Positions 32,633 to 47,046 of a stretch of 64,000 bases of DNA are shown in pieces. Where the stretch lies: the NCBI GenBank assembly GCA_950097015.1, contig CATNEN010000001.1, positions 22,382,001-22,446,000 on the forward strand, written 5' to 3'. The notes under the pieces are model-generated. The model worked only from the letters and a program-made list of their open reading frames with translations. It was not told where the DNA came from and did no database searches. Position 1 is the stretch's first letter. Every line of letters starts with the position of its first letter. The DNA comes from Macrostomum hystrix. Its lineage: Eukaryota > Animalia > Platyhelminthes. A program made the position numbers and the translations under genes.

Positions 32633-34141
32633 CTAGCCAATTATAGTTTTCAACTCTATTAGGTTTTCTTTTTCCTTCTCAAGCACAATGCAGACATTGT
32701 CGCCGATTCTGAATTTGAGATACTTGGAGGAATCCAGTAACCAACTGACCAGAGTTGACGCTCTCGGCAGTGGGTCTCGATGAGTCGCGCAGCGGTACAA
32801 GTCTTCTGGTTTGTCACATGACAGCTCCGGTACACCATTCAACTGCTTCACCGACTCCTTGCTTACAATGAGACCAGTGATGCTGCAGAGTGTGAACACG
32901 TCCTCATAGTCTGATAATAGAAGCATTCGGTTCTGAACGCCGATGCGTGTTGAAGAATCCAAAGCCAGGTTACAATCGTCAGGCAGTGGCAGTGTCAGCT
33001 GAATCTCGAGCGACTCTTTGCTCAGACCAAATACTGAAGGCCCTCCACTGTACATCTCGGTCAGCAGGAACAGCTTGTCGGAGTCACCCGTGATGCAGTG
33101 CACAGACGTAATTTGCGCACGTCTCCGCAGGTCCAAAACGGTCACTTTAGATTTCAATTCTCCACTGAGATCAGTCACAATAACTGCATTGTGCTGAGCT
33201 ATGTACAGCATCTGCCGGTCACTATCGCAATGCAAATCTCTGATAGGCTGATCTAAATCCCAGCTAAATTTCAAATATCCTGCTACTTTGTGCTCGATAG
33301 AGATCATTGATATTGTACTCGCCAATTCCTTACCATCACGGTGCTGCTTTAGCTTCCTTCTGATAGCAACAAAGACCATTGGATTTGGTAGCATTCCCGT
33401 CGCCGAAGAGGCGTCCTGGTTTTTGATAATTCGTTTCGGCCCACTGAGAGAGTAGCCGTTTGTGTTGGTGCACAAGGCCATGCACTGCGCCTCTCCGTTC
33501 AGAGGAAGTTGAGTATGGCTAGTCTTTAACTTGCATGCATGGTCTGCATCAAAGTTTTCAACTCGGGCCACCCTTTCAAACAGCATACTTTCTGTGCAAG
33601 CCTTCAAATCCCTGACGTCCGAGGTCACGTCAGGAAAGGCGGCCATTTTGACCTCTTTGGTTGACTCATCGAAGCGCACCAGCGTTGAATTGATTCCAAA
33701 GTTCTCGAGGGACTCGCGCATGCCTTCAGCCAGAGTGAAAGCCAATCTCAAGTCTTTGGCGTCCTTAGCCACCTCCAATTCATTCTCAAAGCTGTCCAGC
33801 TCAGAAAGAATATTCAACGAGTCCATGATCTGGTCATGGTGCTTGGTGACGGCGGCGGTGAGCTCAGCCTGGAACTTGTCGATGGTCTCTCTAAGCTCGT
33901 GAAAACTTTCATCCAGCAGCTGCAGATCAGAGGCCAGTCTCTGCTGCATCAGGCGCAATGGCTGCTGGAACTTCTTGAAGTGCGCGATCTTGGCGGTCAA
34001 TTTAGTCTCGGCTTCGGCGCACTTGCGCAGGTCGTTCTGCAGATGCTGTCTGCATAGCGGCAGGCATGTGCTGGGAGACGGGCCCTCCGATGGCTGAGTG
34101 CACAGCCTCACTGAGCAGACAGCGGCAGGTTTCTCACTCAT
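32633..34141 (-). CDS. Uncharacterised family member 4, ~502 aa from MSEKPAAVCSVRLC
   Basis: Intact ORF paralogous to 23500 and 25622; acceptor TTGCAG 23 nt upstream of the ATG. Confidence 0.85.
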   Translation of the reverse strand: MSEKPAAVCSVRLCTQPSEGPSPSTCLPLCRQHLQNDLRKCAEAETKLTAKIAHFKKFQQPLRLMQQRLASDLQLLDESFHELRETIDKFQAELTAAVTKHHDQIMDSLNILSELDSFENELEVAKDAKDLRLAFTLAEGMRESLENFGINSTLVRFDESTKEVKMAAFPDVTSDVRDLKACTESMLFERVARVENFDADHACKLKTSHTQLPLNGEAQCMALCTNTNGYSLSGPKRIIKNQDASSATGMLPNPMVFVAIRRKLKQHRDGKELASTISMISIEHKVAGYLKFSWDLDQPIRDLHCDSDRQMLYIAQHNAVIVTDLSGELKSKVTVLDLRRRAQITSVHCITGDSDKLFLLTEMYSGGPSVFGLSKESLEIQLTLPLPDDCNLALDSSTRIGVQNRMLLLSDYEDVFTLCSITGLIVSKESVKQLNGVPELSCDKPEDLYRCATHRDPLPRASTLVSWLLDSSKYLKFRIGDNVCIVLEKEKENLIELKTIIG

Positions 34142-34289
34142 TCCGCACGGCTTGTTGCAAGTTTCTGCAACATTAAAACAAAATAACATGGACTGTATTC
34201 GTGATTTTGCTGTGTAATTTTTCTATTTCTATTAAAAAATTGTTGCTATCTGAATCTGAATGGAAAAGGCCACAAAGAAAACTCTGGCA

Positions 34290-35972
34290 TCATTTTTGAC
34301 GAGCTACCTTTTACCGACCCTAAGCGTTTTACCAAGGCCTTCAACAAGCAGTTCTTTGATCTAACTCACCCGGCCACCTCGAAAGACAGAAGCCAGACAC
34401 AAAGGGAAATCAGACACTCCCCCACCAGCGGCTTTCTGCTCACGTCCAGGGACGTCACGTTGGCCTTCAAAAGCTCCTCGCCGTCCAAAGCCACAGGCCC
34501 GGATGGCTTCTTCCCTATCGTCCTGAAGCACCTCGGCCCTTGGGGAATTGTCTTCATTTGCTGCCTTTTAAAACTGAGTCTTACCACCAGCATCATTGAT
34601 AGTTTTCACCACCACTATGCACCTGGACCTCGGGCAAGGTTGTGCCTCTCCTCAAAGCGGGCAAAGACGCCAGTCTCAGCTCGTCCTACAGGCCCATTTC
34701 CATCTTCCTCTTGCAGCAGGAAAAGTGCCTGCTGTCCACCTTTCAGAGTGCGCTTCCACTTCCCAGCTGGCAGCATGGCTTCCGTGCTGGGCACTCCACC
34801 GCCTCTGCCCTCACCAGTCTTACTACAAGTAGCTTCATAAGTAATGGCTACCATCAACCTAAACCTGCTGAGAGGACAGTGCTCGACGCGCTTGATCTGC
34901 AAAAAGCGTATGTCTGCGTACAGTATCTGTGTGCTTGTGTGCTCAGGAGTCAGCAAAATGGGCAGAATTGCCTCCTCGCTGGCTGCGGTTCTAGTGTCAC
35001 TAAATTATGTGCCACTGCCCACAGCCCTCCTGCAATTATTATTATTATTAAGCTCCTCTGGATGCTCTTTAACTCCAGCCTGCCGAAATGTCTCACCAGG
35101 TGGCTCATCTCACCAGTGCGTAACTCTGCGGTCGGAACACGAGAGTCCTCTTTCGTGGCTCGCTCTCCCCGGCAAGGCGTCTCAGAGCGGGCGTGCCTCA
35201 AGAGGGGTTCTGTCCCCGCTCCTCTTCGCCTTCTACATGAGTGACATCCCGGCTCCTCCTGTCAAGATCCAGCTCACAGCTCACAAGTCCTCCGCTAGAG
35301 CGAGCTCACGAGCTCAAACCATAAGTTCAACGCAGCTCTGACGATCTTCCTTTATGGAACTGCTGTCCCTACGGTTCACAACCCAAAGCTGCTTGGAGTC
35401 CATTTCGACCCGCTCCTGAAATTTCACCTGCACGCCGGCCATCACCGGTAGCATCAAAAGGAACAATAACATCCTGAAAGCCCTGTCTGGAAGCACCTGG
35501 GGACAAGATAAGGAGACTTTGCTCGTCACCAACAAAGCTATCTCCAGGGCCCACGTCAACTACTGCGCCCCTGTCTGGGCGCCTTACCTCAGCCCCACTC
35601 GCACCACCAGACCGCGCAGAACGCAGCGTTATCATTACCGGATGCCACAGCTGCTCGGGCACAGACCATCTCCATGACGAATGAACCATCCTGCCGGTGT
35701 CCTTCACTCCGAACTCCTGTCAGTGCAGTTCTGGGTGCAAGCGCTTCACCCGTGCCATCCGTGTCATCACCTCTCGCTCGATCCCGCATTCCGGCGGCAG
35801 CTTCGCTCGCCACTTACGCCACTAACTTCCTCAACGCGCACCAGCCGCTCCTCTGCCCTTCAGTGGGTCCGCTGATATAGAACATAGCCCAAGAACGCAG
35901 ATATAGCCCAAGGCCCTATTCGCCGAGCTCTTCCCCGGAGAAGGTACTGGCCCTGGCCCGCCGAGTCAAGGT

Positions 35973-35975
<3 letters not shown>
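34290..35975 (+). mobile_element. Degenerate LINE reverse transcriptase fragment (Jockey/I-like) interrupted by a SINE
   Basis: KATGPDG, SYRPIS, QHGFRAGHST, LDLQKAY, GVLSPLLFAFYMSD in shifting frames; followed by (CA)n at 35976-36010. Confidence 0.8.
34910..35050 (+). mobile_element. SINE family 1 3' fragment inserted in the LINE RT
   Basis: Matches 10120-10253 including the (ATT)n tail. Confidence 0.85.
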
Positions 35976-36013
<38 letters not shown>

Positions 36014-36417
36014 TGATTGAATACTTTTAAAAATACAGAAAACAAGAAAAGATAAATTCAATATTCGTCATTTATTAGCCGTGCAAATAAAAACATAGCA
36101 ATGCGCTTTACAAAGACAAAGTGAACGATAAACTTTGAAAAATATCTTACAAACATAAAGCATGTTAACATATCTCTTTGAAATGCAAATACGAGTACAA
36201 GCAAATCTTAATTGCCTTAATCAAGTACTACAGAACCGGGGTCACAAAGAGAATGTACTTTAAGACCTGTGGTTACAAAGAGAATGTACTTTAAGACCCG
36301 GGGTTACAAATGAAATGTACTTCAGACCCGGGGTCACAAAGAGAATTTACTTTAAGACCTGGGGTCAAAATTCTTCGGTACATCACGACCCGTGAAAAAC
36401 AATCCTCATGTGATGCT

Positions 36418-37814
36418 TCAATGCCCAGAGTCTGGCTGAGCAGCAACCGAATCTGCCGGGTCGGCCCACAGGAAAATGGCGTCGCCCATGGCGGTGAGGA
36501 CGCGGCATCGACTGGGATGCGCCGAGATCGACTGCACAACGCCAGCTGACACGGACTTGGTCCTGGCTGTTGCATCAGGCGGCTGATGCCGCAGCCTGCA
36601 TCGCAGGTCGCCGGTGATCAGGTCCCAGCAAAGCAGCTCTCCAGATGCGCCAGCAGAGCCGGACAGAACCAGCGAGTCGCCGGCTGTGACATCACAGTCG
36701 ACGCACAGATCGGCCACGGAGTGCCCGGAGTAGCTGGCCAGGAGGTCGCCAGTGTCCCGATCGATCAGTCGAAGCCGGGCATCTGAACAGCTGGCTAATA
36801 GGCAGCGGCCGTCCCTGGTGGCAGCCAGGCCGACGAGCCCCAACCGGCCCAGGTGATCCTCGCTCAGCTGGCCCTTCCTGGCGTCGTAGCAGCGCAGGCA
36901 GCCGTCCAGACTGGCTGTGTAGATGCGCCAGGACTGCACAGTCACAGACGTGACGGAGTCTCTGGCGTCTGTCAGCAGCTGCACAGGAGCCGAGGCCCGA
37001 CTGCGCAGATCCCACAGGCGGACGGTGCAGTCCACAGAGCCGCTGGCAAGCAGGGTGGCGTCCGGACTGAAGGCTAGGGCGCTGACGCGAGCGAGGTGGC
37101 TGCGGTATCTGGGCGCCGGATTTTGGAGTTGAGAGTGAGCTCAATGGCAAGCTTAATTGGTAGATATCTTGATGTCTATCTCTAAGATTGTTTGAGTATG
37201 GGCGGCTTTCAATGGAATAACAAAGGATTGAAAAAATCTCACACAAAATCTCATTGAGATTTTTTAAAATCTCACTGATAATCTCATAGAGAATCGAAAA
37301 CAATCTGCATGATATTATCATAGAGAATCGCAGACAATCTCACCAAGAATCTCATAGAGAATCGCAGACAATCTCACTGAGAATCTGATAGAGAATCGAA
37401 GACAGTCTCACTGAGAATCTCATAGAGAATCGCAGACAGTCTCACCAAGAATCTCATAGAGAATCACAGACAATCTCATTGAGAATCTCCTTGAGAATCT
37501 TTTAATGAATCGCTGGCCAACAATCCCAATTCTCACTTTCTCACAGCGGTGCCGCTGGCCGTATCCCAGTAGGCCACCATCTTGTCCTCGCCACCGCTAG
37601 CCAGGTTGGCATTGTCGCAGGCGCAGGCCACAGTTAGCACATCTTGGCCGTGGCCCAGATAAGATCTGAGCAGCAGAGATTTAGCCGGATTCCACAGCTT
37701 CAAGGATTTGTCAGCGCCCCCAGTCAGGCAGTAGTTGCCATCGGCGTTGAATCGAACGCACCTGACCGCGCCCTGGCCGCAAACTGTGCGACACTGCAGC
37801 TGCTCAGGCGCGGC
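36418..37814 (-). CDS. WDR83: WD repeat protein 83 (MORG1); exons 37814-37537 and 37108-36418; no genomic ATG at the 5' end
   Basis: CGQGAVRCVRFNADGNYCLTGGADKSLKLWNP, PVQLLTDARDSVTSV, RLIDRDTGDLLASYSGH and GVVQSISAHP match WDR83. The phase-2 GT-AG intron gives AVRK|YRSH. Confidence 0.93.
37225..37510. repeat. Degenerate minisatellite (GAGAATCTCATAGAGAATCGCAGACAATCTCAC)-like in the WDR83 intron
   Basis: Imperfect tandem array. Confidence 0.8.
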
Positions 37815-38444
37815 CTGAATTAGTTTTGTAAAAATTGTAAATTAGAACATTCGTTTTCGTTAGTACGCTACTGACAGTAGGCTAACTGAACATGTATGTA
37901 TTTTTTCTTAAAAAGTAAAAAAATAATGAAGTCCTGATAAACGCTTTAGTCCTAGTTTTTCTTACAATTTTATTCGCAGCTAAGCAGTCACGATGATTAA
38001 AAAACGGGAATAATATAAAAACGGGGCTTATTTATTTCTGCTAACAATAGAAAATCATCGCTACAATAATTGCATGCAGAACATAGCGTTAATAATAATG
38101 TTAGCAAGCAAGATTATTGATCATAAAATAAGGTCATTTGCTCATCATCAGAACAGTAGGAATTTTCATCTCTGTACAATTAGAATACTTCAACAAGGCA
38201 TCCAGCCTTAACAAACTTGCTATTGGGGAAGAAATAAACACTATTAGAAAACTAGGATAATAGCAAGAAATATGAAACCATGCTTGATGTCCATCTTGTC
38301 ATTTTTAAGAAAAAAACATTTCGAAGGTATTTAAATTTGGTATATTAAAGGTATATTGAAATAAATCGCTGCAGGTAGAAATATATCAGAATTAAAGAAA
38401 TGTAACTAGGTATATCAGGTACAGCGGAACTTTGTGCTGAGCTT

Positions 38445-40115
38445 TGAATGGATTGGGATCATAGCCATAACCTTAGAATGGATTGGGATCATGGCCATAA
38501 CCTTAGAATGGATTGGGGTCATAGCCATAACCTTAGAATGGATTGGGATCATGGCCATAACCTTAGAATGGATTGGGGTCATAGCCATAACCTTAGAATG
38601 GATTGGGATCATAGCCATAACCTTAGAATGGATTGGGGTCATAGCCATAACCTTAGAATGGATTGGGATCATGGCCATAACCTTAGAATACATTGGGATC
38701 ATGGCCATAACCTTAGAATGGATTGGGATCATGGCCATAACCTTAGAATGGATTGGGATCATAGCCATAACCTTAGAATGGATTGGGATCATAGCCATAA
38801 CCTTAGAATGGATTGGGATCATAGCCATAACCTTAGAAGGGATTGGGATCATAGCCATAACCTTAGAAGGGATTGGGATCATAGTTATGACCTCTGGTGG
38901 GATTGGGATAATAGTTATAACATCTGAAGGGATTAGGATCACAGTCATGACCTCTAAAAGGGATTGGGATCACAGTCACGACCTATAAAAGGGATTGGGA
39001 TCACAGTCATGACCTCTAAAAGGGATTGGGATCACAGTCATGACCTCTAAAAGGGATTGGGATCACAGTCACGACCTCTGAAGGGATTGGGATCATAGTC
39101 ATGACCTCTGAAGGGATTGGGATCACAGTCATGACCTCTGACGGGATTGGGATCATAGTCACGACCTCTGAAGGGATTGGGATCATAGTCACGACCTCTG
39201 AAGGGATTGGGATCATAGTCACGACCTCTGAAGGGATTGGGATCACAGTCACGACCTCTGATGGGATTGGGATCATAGTCACGACCTCTGAAGGGATTGG
39301 GATCACAGTCACGACCTCTGAAGGGATTGGGATCATAGTCACGACCTCTGAAGGGATTGGGATCATAGTCACGACCTCTGAAGGGATTGGGATCATAGTC
39401 ACGACCTCTGAAGGGATTGGGATCACAGTCACGACCTCTGATGGGATTGGGATCATAGTCACGACCTCTGAAGGGATTGGGATCACAGTCACGACCTCTG
39501 AAGGGATTGGGATCACAGTCATGACCTCTGACGGGATTGGGTTCATAGTCACGACCTCTGACGGGATTGGGATCACAGTCACGACCTCTGACGGGATTGG
39601 GATCATAGTCACGACCTCTGAAGGTATTGGGATCATAGTCACGACCTCTGACGGGATTGGGAACATAGTCACGACCTCTGAAGGGATTGGGATCATAGTC
39701 ACGACCTCTGAAGGGATTGGGATCATAGTCACGACCTCTGAAGGTATTGGGATCATAGTCACGACCTCTGACGGGATTGGGATCATAGTCACGACCTCTG
39801 AAGGGATTGGGATCATAGTCACGATCTATAAAAAGGGATTGGGATCATAGTCACGACCTCTGAAGGGATTGGGATCACAGTCACGACCTCTGAGGGGATT
39901 GGGATCACAGTCACGACCTCTGAAGGGATTGGGATCACAGTCACGACCTCTGAAGGGATTGGGATCACAGTCACGACCTCTGAAGGGATTGGGATCACAG
40001 TCACGACCTCTGAAGGGATTGGGATCACAGTCACGACCTCTGAAGGGATTGGGATCACAGTCACGACCTCTGAAGGGATTGGGATCATAGTCAAGACCTC
40101 TGACGGGATTGGGAT
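38445..40115. repeat. 30-bp minisatellite with two successive sub-types, ~55 copies
   Basis: TTAGAATGGATTGGGATCATAGCCATAACC (38445-38880) changes to CTCTGAAGGGATTGGGATCATAGTCACGAC (38900-40115). Confidence 0.95.
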
Positions 40116-40301: not shown

Positions 40302-43300
40302 CTACTGAGCAGCCATGGGTGGAGAGATGCGCCTCACGCCACTGACAGACTCGCTGCTGTTGCTGCTGATGCCGCCAGCCGAGTTGTCCGCGCTGACAGC
40401 CGCTCGCTTGGCGGCAACGGTTGCCAGGGCGACGGAGTTCTGGCTAGCAACGGCCCGATGCTGCGCCTGCAGGTACTGCTGTTCCTCAATTAGCATTCGC
40501 TGATGCCGCTGCAGTAAGGGCTCCTGGAGTCGGCAGTGGGCGTGATGCCTCAGGTAGTAGCCGGACCAGAAGCGCAGGAACTGGGCGGAGTGCTGCGGCT
40601 TCAGCACCTGTGGCGAGAATAGCCGTCAGGTTCATGCTGGTTCTGATATTAACACGAAAATCAAACAGGTTCTCGCCAGTTTTTTCTTTGAACGAAGCAG
40701 CGCAGACATTTTAGATTCTTATAGAACAATAAAAAAGCTGCCAGCAATCTACAATAAAGGAGGATTCCCCCAAAGTCATGGGGGATTCCCTCAAAATTCT
40801 AAGAGTTTTCTCCTAAAATCAAGAGTGATTTCTTCTAAAGTCTTGAGGGATTTCGTTTTAAAATCATGAGGGATTTCCTTCTAAAATCATGAGGGATTCC
40901 TTTCTAAAATCATGAGGGATTTCCTTCTAAAATCATGAGGGAATCCCTTCTAAAATCATGAGGGATTTCCTTCTAAAATCATGAGGGATTCCCTTCTAAA
41001 ATCATGAGGGATTCCCTTCTAAAATCATGAGGGATTCCCTTCTAAAATCATGAGGGATTTCCTACTAAAATCATGAGGGAATCCCTTCTAAAATCATGAG
41101 GGATTTCCTTCTAAAATCATGAGGGATTTCCTTCTAAAATCATGAGGGATTCCCTTCTAAAATCATCAGGGATTTCCTATTAAAATCATGAGTGATTTCC
41201 TTCTAAAATCATGAGGGATTCCCTTCTAAAATCATGAGGGATTCCCTTCTAAAATCATGAGGGATTCCCTTCTAAAATCATCAGGGATTTCCTATTGAAA
41301 TCATGAGGGATTTCCTACTAAAATCATGAGGGATTCCCTTCTAAAATCATGAGGGATTCCCTTCTAAAATCATGAGGGATTCCCTTCTAAAATCATGAGG
41401 GATTCCCTTCTAAAATCATCAGGGATTTCCTATTAAATTCATGAGGGATTTCCTACTAAAATCATGAGGGATTCCCTTCTAAAATCATGAGGGAATCCCT
41501 TCTAAAATCATGAGGGATTCCCTACTAAAATCATGAGGGAATCCCTTATAAATTCATGAGGGATTCCCTTCTAAAACCATGAGGGATTTCCTACTAAAAT
41601 CATGAGGGATTGGCCCCAAAGTCAAGGTATTTTCCCGTAAAATAATGAGTAAAATAATAACTGCTCAGTTCATGGACTGTGGGAGGCCACCACGCCCGCC
41701 AAGATTTCTACCCCAGCTGATGCTGGCAATTTTTTTACTGCTGGGTAAAGAAGGATGTGAATCGTGAAATTGACTGTCTTGCCTAATAAAACCGATTGTT
41801 TGGACCTTGGACTTGAGATTCGAACTCACGACCTCTCATGATCATAAGTCTTAAGCCAACAACACTGGTCTACGAAGCTTTAGAGCATTTAATCAATTAA
41901 AATTACTTCTTATATTTAGAATGATTGAGAACCCGTACACACACACATTGGAATTACCTGATACCGACCAGCAGCATAATGCGGATTAGTGTAATTAGTA
42001 ACCATGGAATTGACCAGAGACCACAGCGAGTGAGTCTTGGTTCTGATCTTCACTCGCTCCTGATCGCAATTGCCCAAGAAGGTGCCAAATCGATTGCTGT
42101 ACAGGTGTTCCATGATGGTAATGAGCAGGTGTTCATTGAACTCAAATGCGTTCGGGAACTGATGAGTGAGCTGCCACACGCATTCGATGAACTGCAAGAA
42201 CACTGGAGACCGTTCGCTGTCCGACGGATTATCCTCAAGGAAGCCGATGCGCTTGGCAAACTGGTGACCCATCGAGCACCTGTGCGGTTTCGCATAATTA
42301 ACTTGTGTTAATTATAATGTCTAGTAGAGGATCTACAGTTGTGAAAGGCTAACATTGGTAGCTATAGACAACTGTGACAAAATGTCAGGTAACCAATTTC
42401 AGGTACTTCAGTTGACTAAATCTACCAATTTCAGGTACTTCAGTTGACTAAATCAACCAATTTCAGGTACTTCAGTTGACTAAATCTACAAACTTCAGGT
42501 ACTTCAGTTGACTAAATCTACAAACTTCAGGTACTTCAGTTGACTAAAGCTACCAATTTCAGGTACTTCAGTTGACTATAGCTACCAATTTCAGGTACTT
42601 CAGTTGACTAAATCTACCAATTTCAGGTACTTCAGTTGACTATAGCTACCAATTTCAGGTACTTCAGTTGACTAAATCTACCAATTTCAGGTACTTCAGT
42701 TGACTAAATCTACAAACTTCAGGTACTTCAGTTGACTAAATCTACAAACTTCAGGTACTTCAGTTGACTATAGCTACCAATTTCAGGTACTTCAGTTGAC
42801 TAAAGCTACCAATTTCAGGTACTTCAGTTGACTATAGCTACCAATTTCAGGTACTTCAGTTGACTAAATCTACAAACTTCAGGTACTTCAGTTGACTAAA
42901 TCAACCAATTTCAGGTACATCAGATGACTATAGCTACCAATTTCAGGTACTTCAGTTGAATATAGCTACCAATTTCAGGTACATCAGATGACTATAGCTA
43001 CCAATTTCAGGTACTTCAGTTGACTAAATCTACCAATTTCAGGTACATCAGATGACTACCAACTTCAATACACTCCAGTTGGCTATTAAAGCTAAAATGC
43101 TCTGTTTAAAATTTGCTATCAAACACAGTCTACATTGCCGTAGAGTCAAAAGTGAGCAGCTGTTCTCATAGCTCACCACTCTTTCTCAATGAGCGCTTCA
43201 AAGCCGCGTACAGTCCTGTAGTACGGATCAAGGCAGAGCATGGACAGCGAGGTGAGTTGAGCAGTTCGGTCCCAGCCATCTGAGCAGTGCACCAGCACTG

Positions 43301-44513
43301 AGTACTTCTCTGAGCCAACCTTGTGCACAATGTACACCACTCCAACTAGAATCTGGCGAATGTGGCCCAGCCATTGGGTGTTCTCAAGGCAGCTGAGAAA
43401 CTTCACCGACTCAAGCGCTGGCCAGCAGATTTCGCGCAGCTTGCGCAATGACTCGCGCATCACGTGAATGTTTTGAATGTCAACAAAGGCCACCTCGACT
43501 GTGTTGTTGTAGTCCGCCACCGCCTCGTAGCCGCCGCCTTTGCCTCGATTGGCCACAGCGTTGGTCTTCGGCCGGGCGTCGATAATGCACAGAGAAGTTG
43601 TCTGGCCATTGTTGTTGAGTATCTTGGCCAGAAAGCGCTCGTCCTCTTGACAGCGCTTCCCGGCTAGACCCACCATGGGCTGGGAGCATCGCGTGATGGA
43701 GGCCCGGGTGTCCCTGTCCAGCCAGCTCAGCACGGGCACGCGGCTGCGGCTCCTGTAGGCCGCGCACTTGCGCAGATCTTCATCAGTGATCTCGGTGGGA
43801 ATGGCGAACAGTTGGGGATAGGTGGAACAAAGACTATAGTCTCTGTTTAACTCGCACACCTTCCACACCGAACCAGCAGTCCGGATGCCCAATCGCTCGA
43901 ACTCCAGCATGGGATTGTAGACATCCCAGCCCTGCTCAGTCAGCTGGGGCATGGCTTTCCAATAGTCTATGGCAAACAGTATCAGGCTGGAACTGCCCAG
44001 ACTGGAGCCCGGGCGAAAGGTGAGCCGCTGCAGAGCCTCAAAGATATTGTGCCTGGAATTGTTCTGCGTAGGCGCCTTGCTCAGCTGCAGCCGCAGCGAG
44101 AAGAAATCCTTGCACGTCACCTCGATGCCGTACTTATCGCCTCGGCTATTAGCGCCGCCGAATTTCTCCAGCTTGCTGATGCTGCCCAGCGCAATGTCCA
44201 CCGTCTCCTGTGGAGAATTGGCCGAAGCGAAGTGCAAACGGTAGTTGGTGAGCAGCAGGCTGCCCTGGATGGCTCGCTCGTTCAACGGCTCCACCTTGGA
44301 CACGTACTGCTCACTCTCTTTGATTACGATATGCTCAGTCTCGCCTGGTAGCAGATCAACATCGGGAAACTGGCCGGCACCGCTGTTGGCTCCGCTGGCA
44401 CCGCCACCGCCTCTACCAGAGGGCCCTAAACTGGACAATGAGGATTCGGACCTAGCAGAAGGTGTGCCAGCCCTACCTGTGCCAGCCTGCTCAGCTGCAG
44501 CTTGGCTGGACAT
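40302..44513 (-). CDS. MTMR2: Myotubularin-related phosphoinositide 3-phosphatase (MTM1/MTMR1/2 clade); exons 44513-43177, 42279-41958, 40607-40302; ~654 aa
   Basis: PH-GRAM (LLPGE..., LTNYRLHF), [30 protein letters not shown], active site [34 protein letters not shown]. Junctions keep the frame (EKEW|CSMGHQF). Confidence 0.95.
40855..41610. repeat. 23-bp minisatellite (AAAATCATGAGGGATTCCCTTCT)n, myotubularin intron 2
   Basis: Tandem array. Confidence 0.95.
41660..41875 (-). mobile_element. tRNA-derived SINE family 2, degenerate copy
   Basis: Reverse strand reads GACTTATGATC..GAGGTCGTGAGTTCGAATCTC; plus strand CAGTTCATGGAC matches the family motif at 59260 and 60445. Confidence 0.6.
42390..43060. 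repeat. 32-bp minisatellite (AATTTCAGGTACTTCAGTTGACTAAATCTACC)n, myotubularin intron 1
   Basis: Tandem array. Confidence 0.95.
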
Positions 44514-46122
44514 TATGCAACTGCAATAGTGGGACAGAGTAACATCACTTAGCTTACATATAGAGGTATATTTGTATGCGTGAATTATTTGTAACTTAGA
44601 TTTTATCAACAGGTTCTTACAAAACTGAAGATATATTTTCTAGTGTATATTTCTAAGAAGACAATAATTATCCATAATAATTATTACAATTGATTTATGG
44701 TACAATTCCTATTAAATGGTTTTATAGTATTTTTTTATTTTAATGCATCTATTTTAATGCATTCTCAAAGGTCCAAAAAAGATATTGAAGTGATTTAAAC
44801 ACTATTTTTGTTTCTTAGTATTAACTGTACACTTCAGTGTTAAAATGGTTGGTATATATCTTTACCTTGTTTGAATAGGATATATCAGATTAAAAAATGG
44901 TAGAAAAGAGTTCACTACATATTCTAAATATCATAGTAAAATAGGCTTAAGACAAGGAGTGAACTAATTTACTGAAATGAAATGAAATTTGTCTGCCTTT
45001 ATTTTATAAGTTTTTTCATTCTTGTAACACACAAATGTAGGGTGCTGATCTATATTAGACAAAATACAGGTAAGCTTTGATCATAGGTGCCCAATGGCAA
45101 AAGACCTGTATAAATATATACTTTTAGAGTGTATAGCCAGTGTAGGATTCCCTTTGCAATGACCCTAAGTTTTCTAATTGGGTGTTGCCTTACCAAGAAA
45201 ATGGATTGGAACATCTGCTATAATAATGTAATCAGCATAGAAAAGAAAACACTTTTTCATTTTTAAATAGCTACAAATTCTTAACAAAGAAACATAATTT
45301 GATGCAGACTAGAATTTCAGTTTTTAAAGATCTTCTGGCACATGCACAGCATGGCACAGTATACTGTAGATAAAAAAATTGACCCACTATATCTAACTCA
45401 GTCACAGTGGGTAGGCCAATTAATGCATTTCTGAAGCACAAAATAATTTCTGGGGATGCTACTGGCACACAAAGCATGATCACAACTATGGGCTTACAGA
45501 CTTAAGTAAAAATTGCTTAGGCCTACAATTAATATAAATAGAATTAGAATAGTAACTGAGGCCACCTTGCTTAAGTGACGATATGAATATCAGCACTTTG
45601 TCTGATTCCAAGTTTACAGAGTTCTGTAAACATTCGATAACTTTTTACTCTTGACTGTTAAAATTCGAGGACTTTTATACCTTAAGCTTCAATATCTTAT
45701 GTCTATGCGGTTCTTCTTGTCAACTATTTAACGCATTAAGCATTCTTTTTTGGCAATGTGGTTTAAAGTCTTAAAATTAAATAAGCCTACACAAATCGAT
45801 TTTTACTTAATAATATTCGAGTGGGCCCTATTGAGATGGGAATAACAGACTAAAGTGAAAAACGAAGTTAAATAAAGGACGATTTATTTTAAAAAACTGT
45901 GTCAGTTTTTATATAAGGCAGGTATATTTTCGAGTTTAGAGCAATTAAATTTTTGAAGGAATCATTTTGATAGGAAATTAAGAAGAACAATCAAACAAAA
46001 AGCTTAAGTAAAACTCTTTAAAGGAAAACTCTTTTTGGTTTTCAACTTGATTTGGTATACTTTTACGAGAAACATACTAGTTCGATTAAACAAAATGTTT
46101 CTGTTATAATCTGTTTTATTGC

Positions 46123-47046
46123 CTAGTTTAAAAAACCGAAACCGAAGTCCAAACCGAACGGCAGAGACCCGATAACTCGGTTCTGCATATCAGTTAAAAC
46201 AATCATTACCTTGTACTCAGGAACCTTTTCAGCTGAGTCACTTTGTAAGTAACGCGCCACTGACACGAAGACAATTGGCTGAGGAAGCAAGCGGCCTGTC
46301 GGAGTTTGCTGCGATGTCACGATGCAATCGGAGTCGTCGAGGACAAAGCCGCACGTGTTGTTGCATACAACCAAGCATTTCGGCTCACCGTCCAACTCAA
46401 CATGCTGCTCAGTGCTCTGTACTCCGACACGTTCCTTATTGTCCTGTGTGACGTCAAGATTTTAAATCTGAACTCTAGCCAAGCACATCTCAGTCTCTAT
46501 GCACACCTTCAGGTCGCTGATCCTCAAGTTTACGTCCGGAAGGATGGCCATTTTCGAATCCGCAGCTTCCTCACCTTGGCAAACCAGTTTCGAGCTCAGC
46601 TTTAGCGTCTCGAGAGACCGTCTCATGTTTTCATTGACAGTGAAGGCCTCCCTGAGCTTACCTGTATCTTTTGCTGTCTTCAGCTCCTTCTCAAAGAGTT
46701 CTAGCTCGGAAAGCACTTGCAGCGAGTCCAACAGGTCGTCATTGTGCTTGCTGATGGCAGCGTTGAGTTCCGCCTGCACCTTGTCCAAGGTCTCTCTTAT
46801 CTTATCTCTTATCTCAAATGTGTCACCCAGCAGTTGCAGGTTCGATGCCAGTCTCTGCTGCATCAGCCGTAGCGGCTTCTGACATCGTTTAAGTCGGGCA
46901 ATCTTTTCAGCACCGAAAACTTGGGAATTTTCACACTGGAGAATTTCATGTTCAAGGTGGTGCCTGCAAAGTGGCTGGCAAGTGATAGCGGATACACCTT
47001 CAGCTGAGCCGCTGCAGAATCTCACAGAGCACTTGGTTGCTTCCAT
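46123..47046 (-). pseudogene. Uncharacterised family member 5, frameshifted (~46465) and truncated
   Basis: MEATKCSVRFC...CQPLCRHHL...MQQRLASNL, continuing in another frame as LDGEPKCLVVCNNTCGF...LPQPIVFVSV; lacks the C-terminal third. Confidence 0.75.

What the first reader, a model, noticed from the sequence alone, without database searches (positions are those of the whole stretch)
37537..37850. WDR83 has no genomic start codon: initiator Met probably supplied by an AUG-terminated spliced leader
Seen: on the minus strand the sequence reads ATG TTC TAA TTT ACA ATT TTT ACA AAA CTA ATT CAG | GCC GCG CCT GAG CAG. There is an in-frame stop upstream, a branch-point-like CTAAT and an AG acceptor, and the conserved protein begins in phase 0 right after the AG (AAPEQ..., compare human MAFPEP...). 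The first in-frame ATG is ~80 codons in, inside the WD repeats. Known: flatworm spliced leaders end in AUG, which has been shown to act as initiator Met in schistosomes. Inference: SL-AUG + GCC gives MAAPEQ, a full-length ~323 aa WDR83, so this gene would depend on trans-splicing to be translated.
Basis: partly seen in the sequence, partly recalled or inferred. Interest (0 to 1): 0.85.

Follow-up and report, generated by a model that had tools for sequence, protein, structure and literature searches.

The report
WDR83 start codon from spliced leader
In this flatworm (Macrostomum hystrix) the WDR83 gene has no start codon of its own, and assembled transcripts show the trans-spliced leader, which ends in AUG, joined in frame to its first codon; this is a clean new example of a mechanism known in flatworms since 2006.

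Summary
A two-exon WDR83/MORG1 gene lies on the minus strand (37814..37537 and 37108..36418; 322 codons plus stop). It has no in-frame ATG before codon 79. An in-frame TAA lies 10 codons upstream of an AG acceptor.

Transcript contigs from three runs of one study cover exon 1 exactly. They then continue into 23 non-genomic letters...TGCGAAGACTCAATTTATTGCAT. The next letter, G, is shared with the acceptor, and GCC GCG follows. This gives ...AUG|GCC GCG.

That sequence is the 3' end of the genome's own 45-nt spliced leader. Its gene occurs in at least 20 exact copies as ...ATG|GTAAG, with an Sm-like site and three hairpins. The junction does not exist in the DNA, and the gene is single-copy. All retrieved full-length-type M. 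lignano orthologue models also lack a Met and begin at the same acceptor.

Translation from the leader's AUG is inferred, not shown. The gene also lies about 136 nt downstream of another transcript's probable poly(A) site, which looks operon-like.

The mechanism is published (Cheng 2006), and this scan has already followed up the same thing elsewhere in this genome (POP5). This is an ordinary, well-supported instance of low novelty. One contig from a second study reads AUU at the junction; that is unexplained.

The parts
37537..37814 (-). WDR83 coding exon 1: 278 nt, 92 codons plus 2 nt, beginning GCC GCG CCT, with two WD40 repeats and no start codon
   Evidence: RNA contigs of X5, X6 and X7 cover exactly 37537-37815.
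37815..37816 (-). AG trans-splice acceptor. The G at 37815 is ambiguous with the last G of the leader's AUG.
   Evidence: loose ends start at 37815 in three runs..
37816..37950 (-). Outron or intercistronic spacer: 28% GC, CTAAT at 37823-19, in-frame TAA at 37844-42, no contig coverage
   Evidence: (zero depth 37820-37947).
37109..37536 (-). Cis intron (GTGAGA...CAG) containing a 34-bp tandem repeat at 37268-37499
   Evidence: the loose end at 37537 equals the first 30 nt of exon 2..
36418..37108 (-). WDR83 coding exon 2: 691 nt including TGA at 36420-18
   Evidence: 79% identical to M. lignano WDR83. WD40.
36067..36417 (-). 3' UTR, with AATAAA at 36076-36071
   Evidence: Contig lengths place the 3' ends at about 36067-36128..
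37578..37580 (-). First in-frame genomic ATG (codon 79), inside WD40 repeat 2
37951..38444 (-). 3' end of an upstream transcript: AATAAA at 37974-69, contig ends at 37951/37952. Probably the 3' UTR of the myotubularin-related gene.
   Evidence: contigs in all four runs.. Strand is inferred from the poly(A) signal only.

Best explanation
WDR83 of Macrostomum hystrix is transcribed without a start codon. The spliceosome joins the 45-nt spliced leader (SL) to the AG acceptor at 37816-15. The leader's last three bases are AUG, which land directly in front of GCC GCG CCT in phase 0. The mature mRNA therefore reads ...UUGCAUG GCC GCG..., with G at -3 and G at +4, and encodes a 323-residue seven-bladed WD40 protein starting M-A-A-P-E-Q. 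Trans-splicing is thus required for translation of the protein as well as for capping. The gene is probably the downstream member of an operon-like pair, because the acceptor lies about 136 nt after the probable poly(A) site of the upstream myotubularin-related gene's transcript. Shown here: the SL-exon junction in RNA, the frame, the SL RNA genes, the absence of any other usable AUG, and the same Met-less arrangement in M. lignano models. Inferred: that ribosomes initiate at the SL AUG, and the operon.
For:: contigs of 1283-1344 nt in X5, X6 and X7 lie on 37537-37815. They carry 23 further letters that read, on the mRNA strand, TGCGAAGACTCAATTTATTGCAT before the shared G and GCC. The same contigs splice 37537 to exon 2.
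20 genomic copies of that sequence are followed by GTAAG, in arrays of about 11.6 kb; three hairpins plus a single-stranded AUAUUUUUAG, z = -4.5.
the junction is absent from the genome; exon 1 has one strong match only, so the contigs do not come from a retrocopy.
the CDS is 322 codons with no internal stop. The first in-frame Met is codon 79, after three out-of-frame ATGs.
orthologues with a Met start 1-5 residues before the conserved Pro. Exon 1 holds two WD40 repeats. In the model of M. lignano P0020, the first beta-strand corresponds to exon residues 7-12, so a start at Met79 would lose seven strands.
all retrieved full-length-type M. lignano WDR83 models begin without Met (PEQ..., TTPEQ..., FQTTPEQ..., where FQ is the TTT CAG acceptor read through), and NCBI labels two of them 'partial'.
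Literature: all reported flatworm SLs end in ATG, which can act as initiator (Cheng 2006, via PMC9851317 and PMC12582326). The M. hystrix SL likely contains the final ATG start codon (PMC10468722).
Against: There is no protein-level or ribosome-profiling evidence.
All laid runs are assembled contigs. They drop rare isoforms and give neither strand nor abundance.
The three concordant runs come from one study.
The one contig from a second study (X1, 228 nt) reads ...AUUUAUUGCAU-U|GCC, that is AUU rather than AUG, at the junction. No such SL variant exists in this assembly.
No contig bridges 37820-37947, so a polycistronic precursor is not shown.
Confidence: 0.88

Rival explanations
1. A cis-spliced upstream exon, for example ATG|GT at 38281-38277, supplies the start codon. 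The SL-bearing form would then be a minor or alternative isoform.
For: The ATG|GTTTCA site exists. The region 37951-38444 is transcribed. Contigs can miss rarer isoforms.
Against: All three exon-1 contigs of the main study carry the SL. Contigs run through 38281-38277 without a joint and stop at 37951/2, 17-18 nt after an AATAAA, as a 3' end would. The M. lignano annotators found no upstream exon either.
Confidence: 0.03
2. Translation starts inside the exon, either at a near-cognate codon (CUG at codon 6) or at Met79, and the SL AUG is skipped.
For: An in-frame CTG at codon 6 and an ATG at codon 79 exist. Non-AUG starts on SL mRNAs are reported in nematodes (PMC9851317).
Against: The SL AUG is the first AUG, is in frame, and has G at -3 and G at +4 (read). 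Three out-of-frame ATGs precede Met79. A Met79 start would delete about two propeller blades. Residues from Pro3 onward are identical to M. lignano.
Confidence: 0.06
3. The locus is a decaying or untranslated gene copy, so the missing ATG is simply a defect.
For: There is no genomic ATG. Tandem repeats lie in the intron and the 3' UTR.
Against: The gene is single-copy. The frame is intact over 322 codons. Exon 1 is 96-98% identical and exon 2 is 79% identical to M. lignano. The gene is expressed and correctly spliced in four runs.
Confidence: 0.02

Closest known systems
SL-AUG-initiated mRNAs of Schistosoma mansoni (Cheng, Cohen, Ndegwa & Davis 2006, J Biol Chem 281:733; summarised in PMC9851317)
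   Same: The spliced leader ends in AUG. That AUG is in frame with the ORF, and the recipient gene lacks its own start. In that study more than 40 schistosome cDNAs needed the SL AUG.
   Different: This is a free-living macrostomid, not a parasite, with a different 45-nt SL sequence. Initiation was tested experimentally in that study and is not tested here.
Macrostomum SL trans-splicing and operons (M. lignano: PMC8629364; M. hystrix genome: PMC10468722)
   Same: The SL 3' end is the same, as is the GTAAG donor and the Sm-like site between hairpins. The intergenic distance of about 100 bp typical of operons matches the 136 nt seen here.
   Different: Those papers do not list SL-AUG-dependent genes or WDR83. 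The M. hystrix paper only remarks that the SL likely contains the final ATG.
Earlier cases in this scan on the same genome (POP5, s1-316750; mitochondrial TyrRS and a peptidase, s1-316733)
   Same: The anatomy is identical: an ATG-less ORF starting at an acceptor, with SL-AUG seen in transcripts.
   Different: It is a different gene. Here there is added evidence that the M. lignano orthologue models are also Met-less and that the gene is operon-like.
Human WDR83/MORG1 (PDB 9s2f chain WD)
   Same: A full-length single-stretch match: P0020 residues 10-317 against chain residues 18-312, E = 1.7e-83. It is a seven-bladed WD40 propeller of about 315-323 aa.
   Different: The human gene has its own ATG and about 8 more N-terminal residues.

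Membership tests
Flatworm SL-AUG-initiated mRNA (slORF) | The organism has an SL RNA whose leader ends in AUG immediately before the GU donor | tested here: met
   20 exact copies of ...TTGCATG|GTAAG; canonical fold with an Sm-like site.
Flatworm SL-AUG-initiated mRNA (slORF) | The mature mRNA carries the SL joined at a 3' splice acceptor of the gene | tested here: met
   SL letters follow 37815 in the contigs of X5, X6 and X7, and also in X1; the junction is absent from the DNA.
Flatworm SL-AUG-initiated mRNA (slORF) | The SL AUG is in frame with the conserved ORF, with no intervening stop | tested here: met
   AUG|GCC GCG, phase 0, 322 open codons.
Flatworm SL-AUG-initiated mRNA (slORF) | No genomic AUG can give the full-length protein | tested here: met
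   TAA 10 codons upstream, and the first in-frame ATG at codon 79 after three out-of-frame ATGs.
Flatworm SL-AUG-initiated mRNA (slORF) | Initiation at the SL AUG is demonstrated by protein N-terminus, ribosome footprints or a reporter | not testable with these tools
   No proteomic or ribosome-profiling data are available here.
WDR83 / MORG1 orthologue | A seven-bladed WD40 propeller of about 315 aa whose best full-length match is WDR83 | tested here: met
   (source names WDR83 and MAPK organizer 1). (WD40 in both exons). (9s2f WDR83, E = 1.7e-83, via M. lignano P0020). (28 strands, pLDDT 87.6). The joined M. hystrix protein itself was not searched.
WDR83 / MORG1 orthologue | A single orthologous locus in the genome | tested here: met
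   one match at 1.5e-59, and the next best at 3e-10.
Downstream gene of an SL-resolved operon | A same-strand upstream gene ends within about 1 kb (typically about 100 bp) of the SL acceptor | tested here: inconclusive
   contigs end at 37951/2, 17-18 nt after a minus-strand AATAAA and 136 nt before the acceptor. Contigs give no strand, and continuity with the myotubularin exons was not shown.
Downstream gene of an SL-resolved operon | A polycistronic precursor spans the spacer | tested here: inconclusive
   zero contig depth at 37820-37947. However, contigs drop rare precursors.

The most novel reading that the evidence does not exclude
Dependence of WDR83 on the leader's AUG is old and obligatory across Macrostomum, being shared by M. 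hystrix and M. lignano. Synthesis of a spliceosome quality-control factor (the DHX35-GPATCH1-WDR83 module, PMC11958768) would then be hard-wired to trans-splicing capacity, forming a feedback loop. The AUU-ended junction seen in one run would reflect a real leader variant that yields untranslatable WDR83 mRNA.
Probability: 0.08. Interest if true: 0.45.

Novelty: new member of a known kind. Interest (0 to 1): 0.2.

Why it matters
The practical value lies in annotation. Gene finders that demand a genomic ATG will truncate such genes or label them 'partial', as happened to the M. lignano orthologues. Any transgene or knock-in design for WDR83 in Macrostomum must keep the acceptor and its phase. 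Biologically, it adds a well-documented free-living flatworm example to a phenomenon mainly described in parasites. It also shows the arrangement kept in two divergent Macrostomum species. It does not open a new question.

Tried and rejected
The M. lignano genomic acceptor and transcript contigs therefore could not be fetched, and the M. lignano evidence rests on protein models only.
- Rfam has no family that matches the flatworm SL RNA. The scan of two SL loci returned only a U1 snRNA.
- The bacterial promoter/terminator scan is irrelevant to this eukaryote and was ignored.
- A retrocopy origin of the SL-exon junction is rejected.
- The cis-donor idea at about 38279 is rejected, because contigs pass through it unspliced.
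- The joined two-exon protein was never sent to any search or fold. Exons were searched apart by reference, and the natural M. lignano protein P0020 stood in for the structure and PDB searches. A script joined the exons only to count codons, stops and ATGs, and printed no sequence.

Full report
**What is in the sequence**

ATG lies at 37850-48, followed by TTC and TAA (37844-42). Nine sense codons then end in CAG, with the AG at 37816-15. GCC GCG CCT GAG CAG begins at 37814.

The frame is open for 92 codons to a GTGAGA donor at 37536. After a 428-nt intron (37536-37109), which contains a 34-bp tandem repeat, the frame resumes in phase at 37108. It runs to TGA at 36420-18. A script that only counted gave these figures:
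- The exons are 278 + 691 = 969 nt, that is 322 codons plus stop, with no internal stop.
- The first in-frame ATG is codon 79 (37580-78).
- Three out-of-frame ATGs precede it, opening ORFs of 5, 2 and 23 aa.
- The nearest upstream in-frame stop is the TAA, 10 codons before the acceptor.
- GC content is 28% in the 135 nt upstream of the acceptor and 61% in exon 1.

**What the gene is**

- Both exons carry WD40 repeats.
- Exon 2, searched by reference, finds M. lignano proteins at 79% identity. Sources name these "WD repeat domain-containing protein 83", and they name more distant hits "mitogen-activated protein kinase organizer 1".
- The M. lignano orthologue P0020 aligns in one stretch (10-317) to human WDR83 in PDB 9s2f (18-312, E = 1.7e-83).
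- P0020 folds as a confident propeller of 28 strands (pLDDT 87.6, pTM 0.86).
- The genome holds one strong match to exon 1.

G000 has 220,453,370 bases in 42 contigs. This matches the published M. hystrix assembly of about 220 Mb in 42 contigs (PMC10468722).

**The decisive test**

I laid four public runs, all held as assembled contigs, on 37500-38444. In X5, X6 and X7 (one study) a contig of 1283-1344 nt lies on exactly 37537-37815.

- On one side the contig continues with the first 30 nt of exon 2, so the intron is removed as modelled.
- On the other side it continues with 23 letters that lie on nothing in the stretch.

On the mRNA strand those 23 letters read TGCGAAGACTCAATTTATTGCAT. The next letter is G at 37815, which fits both the acceptor's G and a leader ending in ATG, and then GCC GCG. 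The mRNA therefore reads ...UUGCAUG|GCC GCG CCU, in phase 0.

There is no contig depth at 37820-37947.

**The leader is the organism's own**

- The same 24 letters followed by GT occur 20 times exactly in the genome, in arrays of about 11.6 kb on three contigs.
- The gene reads as a 45-nt leader (L002:1503-1547, minus strand) ending ATG, followed by GTAAG.
- The 108-nt RNA folds into three hairpins with a single-stranded AUAUUUUUAG between the second and third (z = -4.5).
- The SL-WDR83 junction is absent from the genome at up to 2 mismatches. The contigs therefore reflect trans-splicing and not a retrocopy.

**Why the SL AUG is the likely start (inference)**

- It is the first AUG on the mRNA, it is in frame, and it has G at -3 and G at +4.
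- Orthologues that have an annotated Met begin 1-5 residues before the conserved Pro, which is residue 3 of exon 1.
- In the P0020 model the first strand corresponds to exon residues 7-12. A start at Met79 would remove seven strands, nearly two blades.
- From Pro3 onward, exon 1 is almost identical to M. lignano (96-98%).
- All retrieved full-length-type M. lignano models also lack a Met: PEQ... (two NCBI 'partial' entries), TTPEQ..., and FQTTPEQ.... In the last, FQ is what TTT CAG gives if the acceptor is read through. The Met-less arrangement is therefore shared by two Macrostomum species.

**Context**

In all four runs, contigs cover 37951/37952 (or 38005) upward to beyond 38444. The sharp end at 37951/2 lies 17-18 nt after a minus-strand AATAAA at 37974-69. 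Further upstream on the same strand lie a 30-bp x 55 minisatellite (38445-40115) and a myotubularin-related phosphatase gene (PF06602, E = 1e-100).

The WDR83 acceptor thus lies about 136 nt after a probable poly(A) site. This is the spacing typical of M. lignano operons, whose peak is about 100 bp (PMC8629364). The strand of the upstream transcript and a polycistronic precursor are not shown, so the operon remains an inference.

**Comparison with what is known**

- All reported flatworm leaders end in ATG.
- Cheng et al. (2006) showed that in S. mansoni this AUG is in frame in 28% of trans-spliced mRNAs and is required by more than 40 cDNAs (as summarised in PMC9851317, and PMC12582326).
- This scan has already followed up the same phenomenon on other pieces of this genome (POP5 and two neighbouring genes).

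WDR83 is therefore a new, well-documented member of a known kind.

**Loose end**

The single contig from a second study (X1, 228 nt, one mismatch in 216) ends at 37814. It continues with 12 letters that give ...AUUUAUUGCAU-U|GCC, that is AUU instead of AUG. No leader gene with that ending exists in this assembly. It may be a strain variant, a contig-tip artefact or something real.

**Limits**

- All RNA evidence comes from contigs, not raw reads.
- The three concordant runs come from one study.
- The joined protein was not searched or folded. The exons were handled apart, and P0020 stood in for it.

Noticed in passing
window 37814 (run X1): One contig from a second study joins the leader to exon 1 with AUU instead of AUG (...ATTTATTGCATT|GCC). 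No such SL gene variant exists in the assembly.
   Followed up: partly
window 38445-40115: A 30-bp minisatellite of 55.5 copies, 93% matching, lies between the myotubularin-related gene and WDR83. It is open in several frames (10-aa units such as IPIPSEVVTM). RNA contigs run into it from 38444, so it is transcribed, probably as 3' UTR.
   Followed up: partly
window 41919-44609 (-): A myotubularin-related phosphatase gene (GRAM and Myotub-related domains, PF06602 E = 1e-100, CSDGWDRT active-site motif) lies upstream on the same strand. It may form an operon with WDR83.
   Followed up: partly
L002:1840-2002 (-), G000 contig C15: A U1 snRNA gene (Rfam RF00003, 151.7 bits) sits about 300 nt upstream of the SL RNA gene, in the same orientation, inside the tandem unit of about 11.6 kb. 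An earlier scan note places 5S rDNA in the same array.
   Followed up: no
G000 C7:8556415, C7:8561403, C24:365104, C38:27887531 and others: Eleven genomic copies of the leader's 3' end are not followed by GT; the next bases are GGC, GCT, GAA and so on. They look like DNA copies of trans-spliced mRNAs (retrocopies or SL relics).
   Followed up: no
window 32633-34189 (-) and 46462-47046 (-): Two ORFs share a similar Cys-rich N-terminus and coiled-coil stretch (...QPLRLMQQRLAS.LQLL...). The 518-aa ORF has no Pfam match. The second ORF was not scanned. They appear to be lineage-specific paralogues flanking the locus.
   Followed up: no
window 34460-35341 (+): ORFs with reverse-transcriptase-like motifs (…HGFRAGHSTASAL…) lie downstream of WDR83 and look like a non-LTR retrotransposon fragment. 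This rests on reading the translation only.
   Followed up: no
window 36232-36367 and 35975-36010: A 31-bp tandem repeat of 4.4 copies lies inside the WDR83 3' UTR. An (AC)18 microsatellite lies just beyond its poly(A) signal.
   Followed up: no
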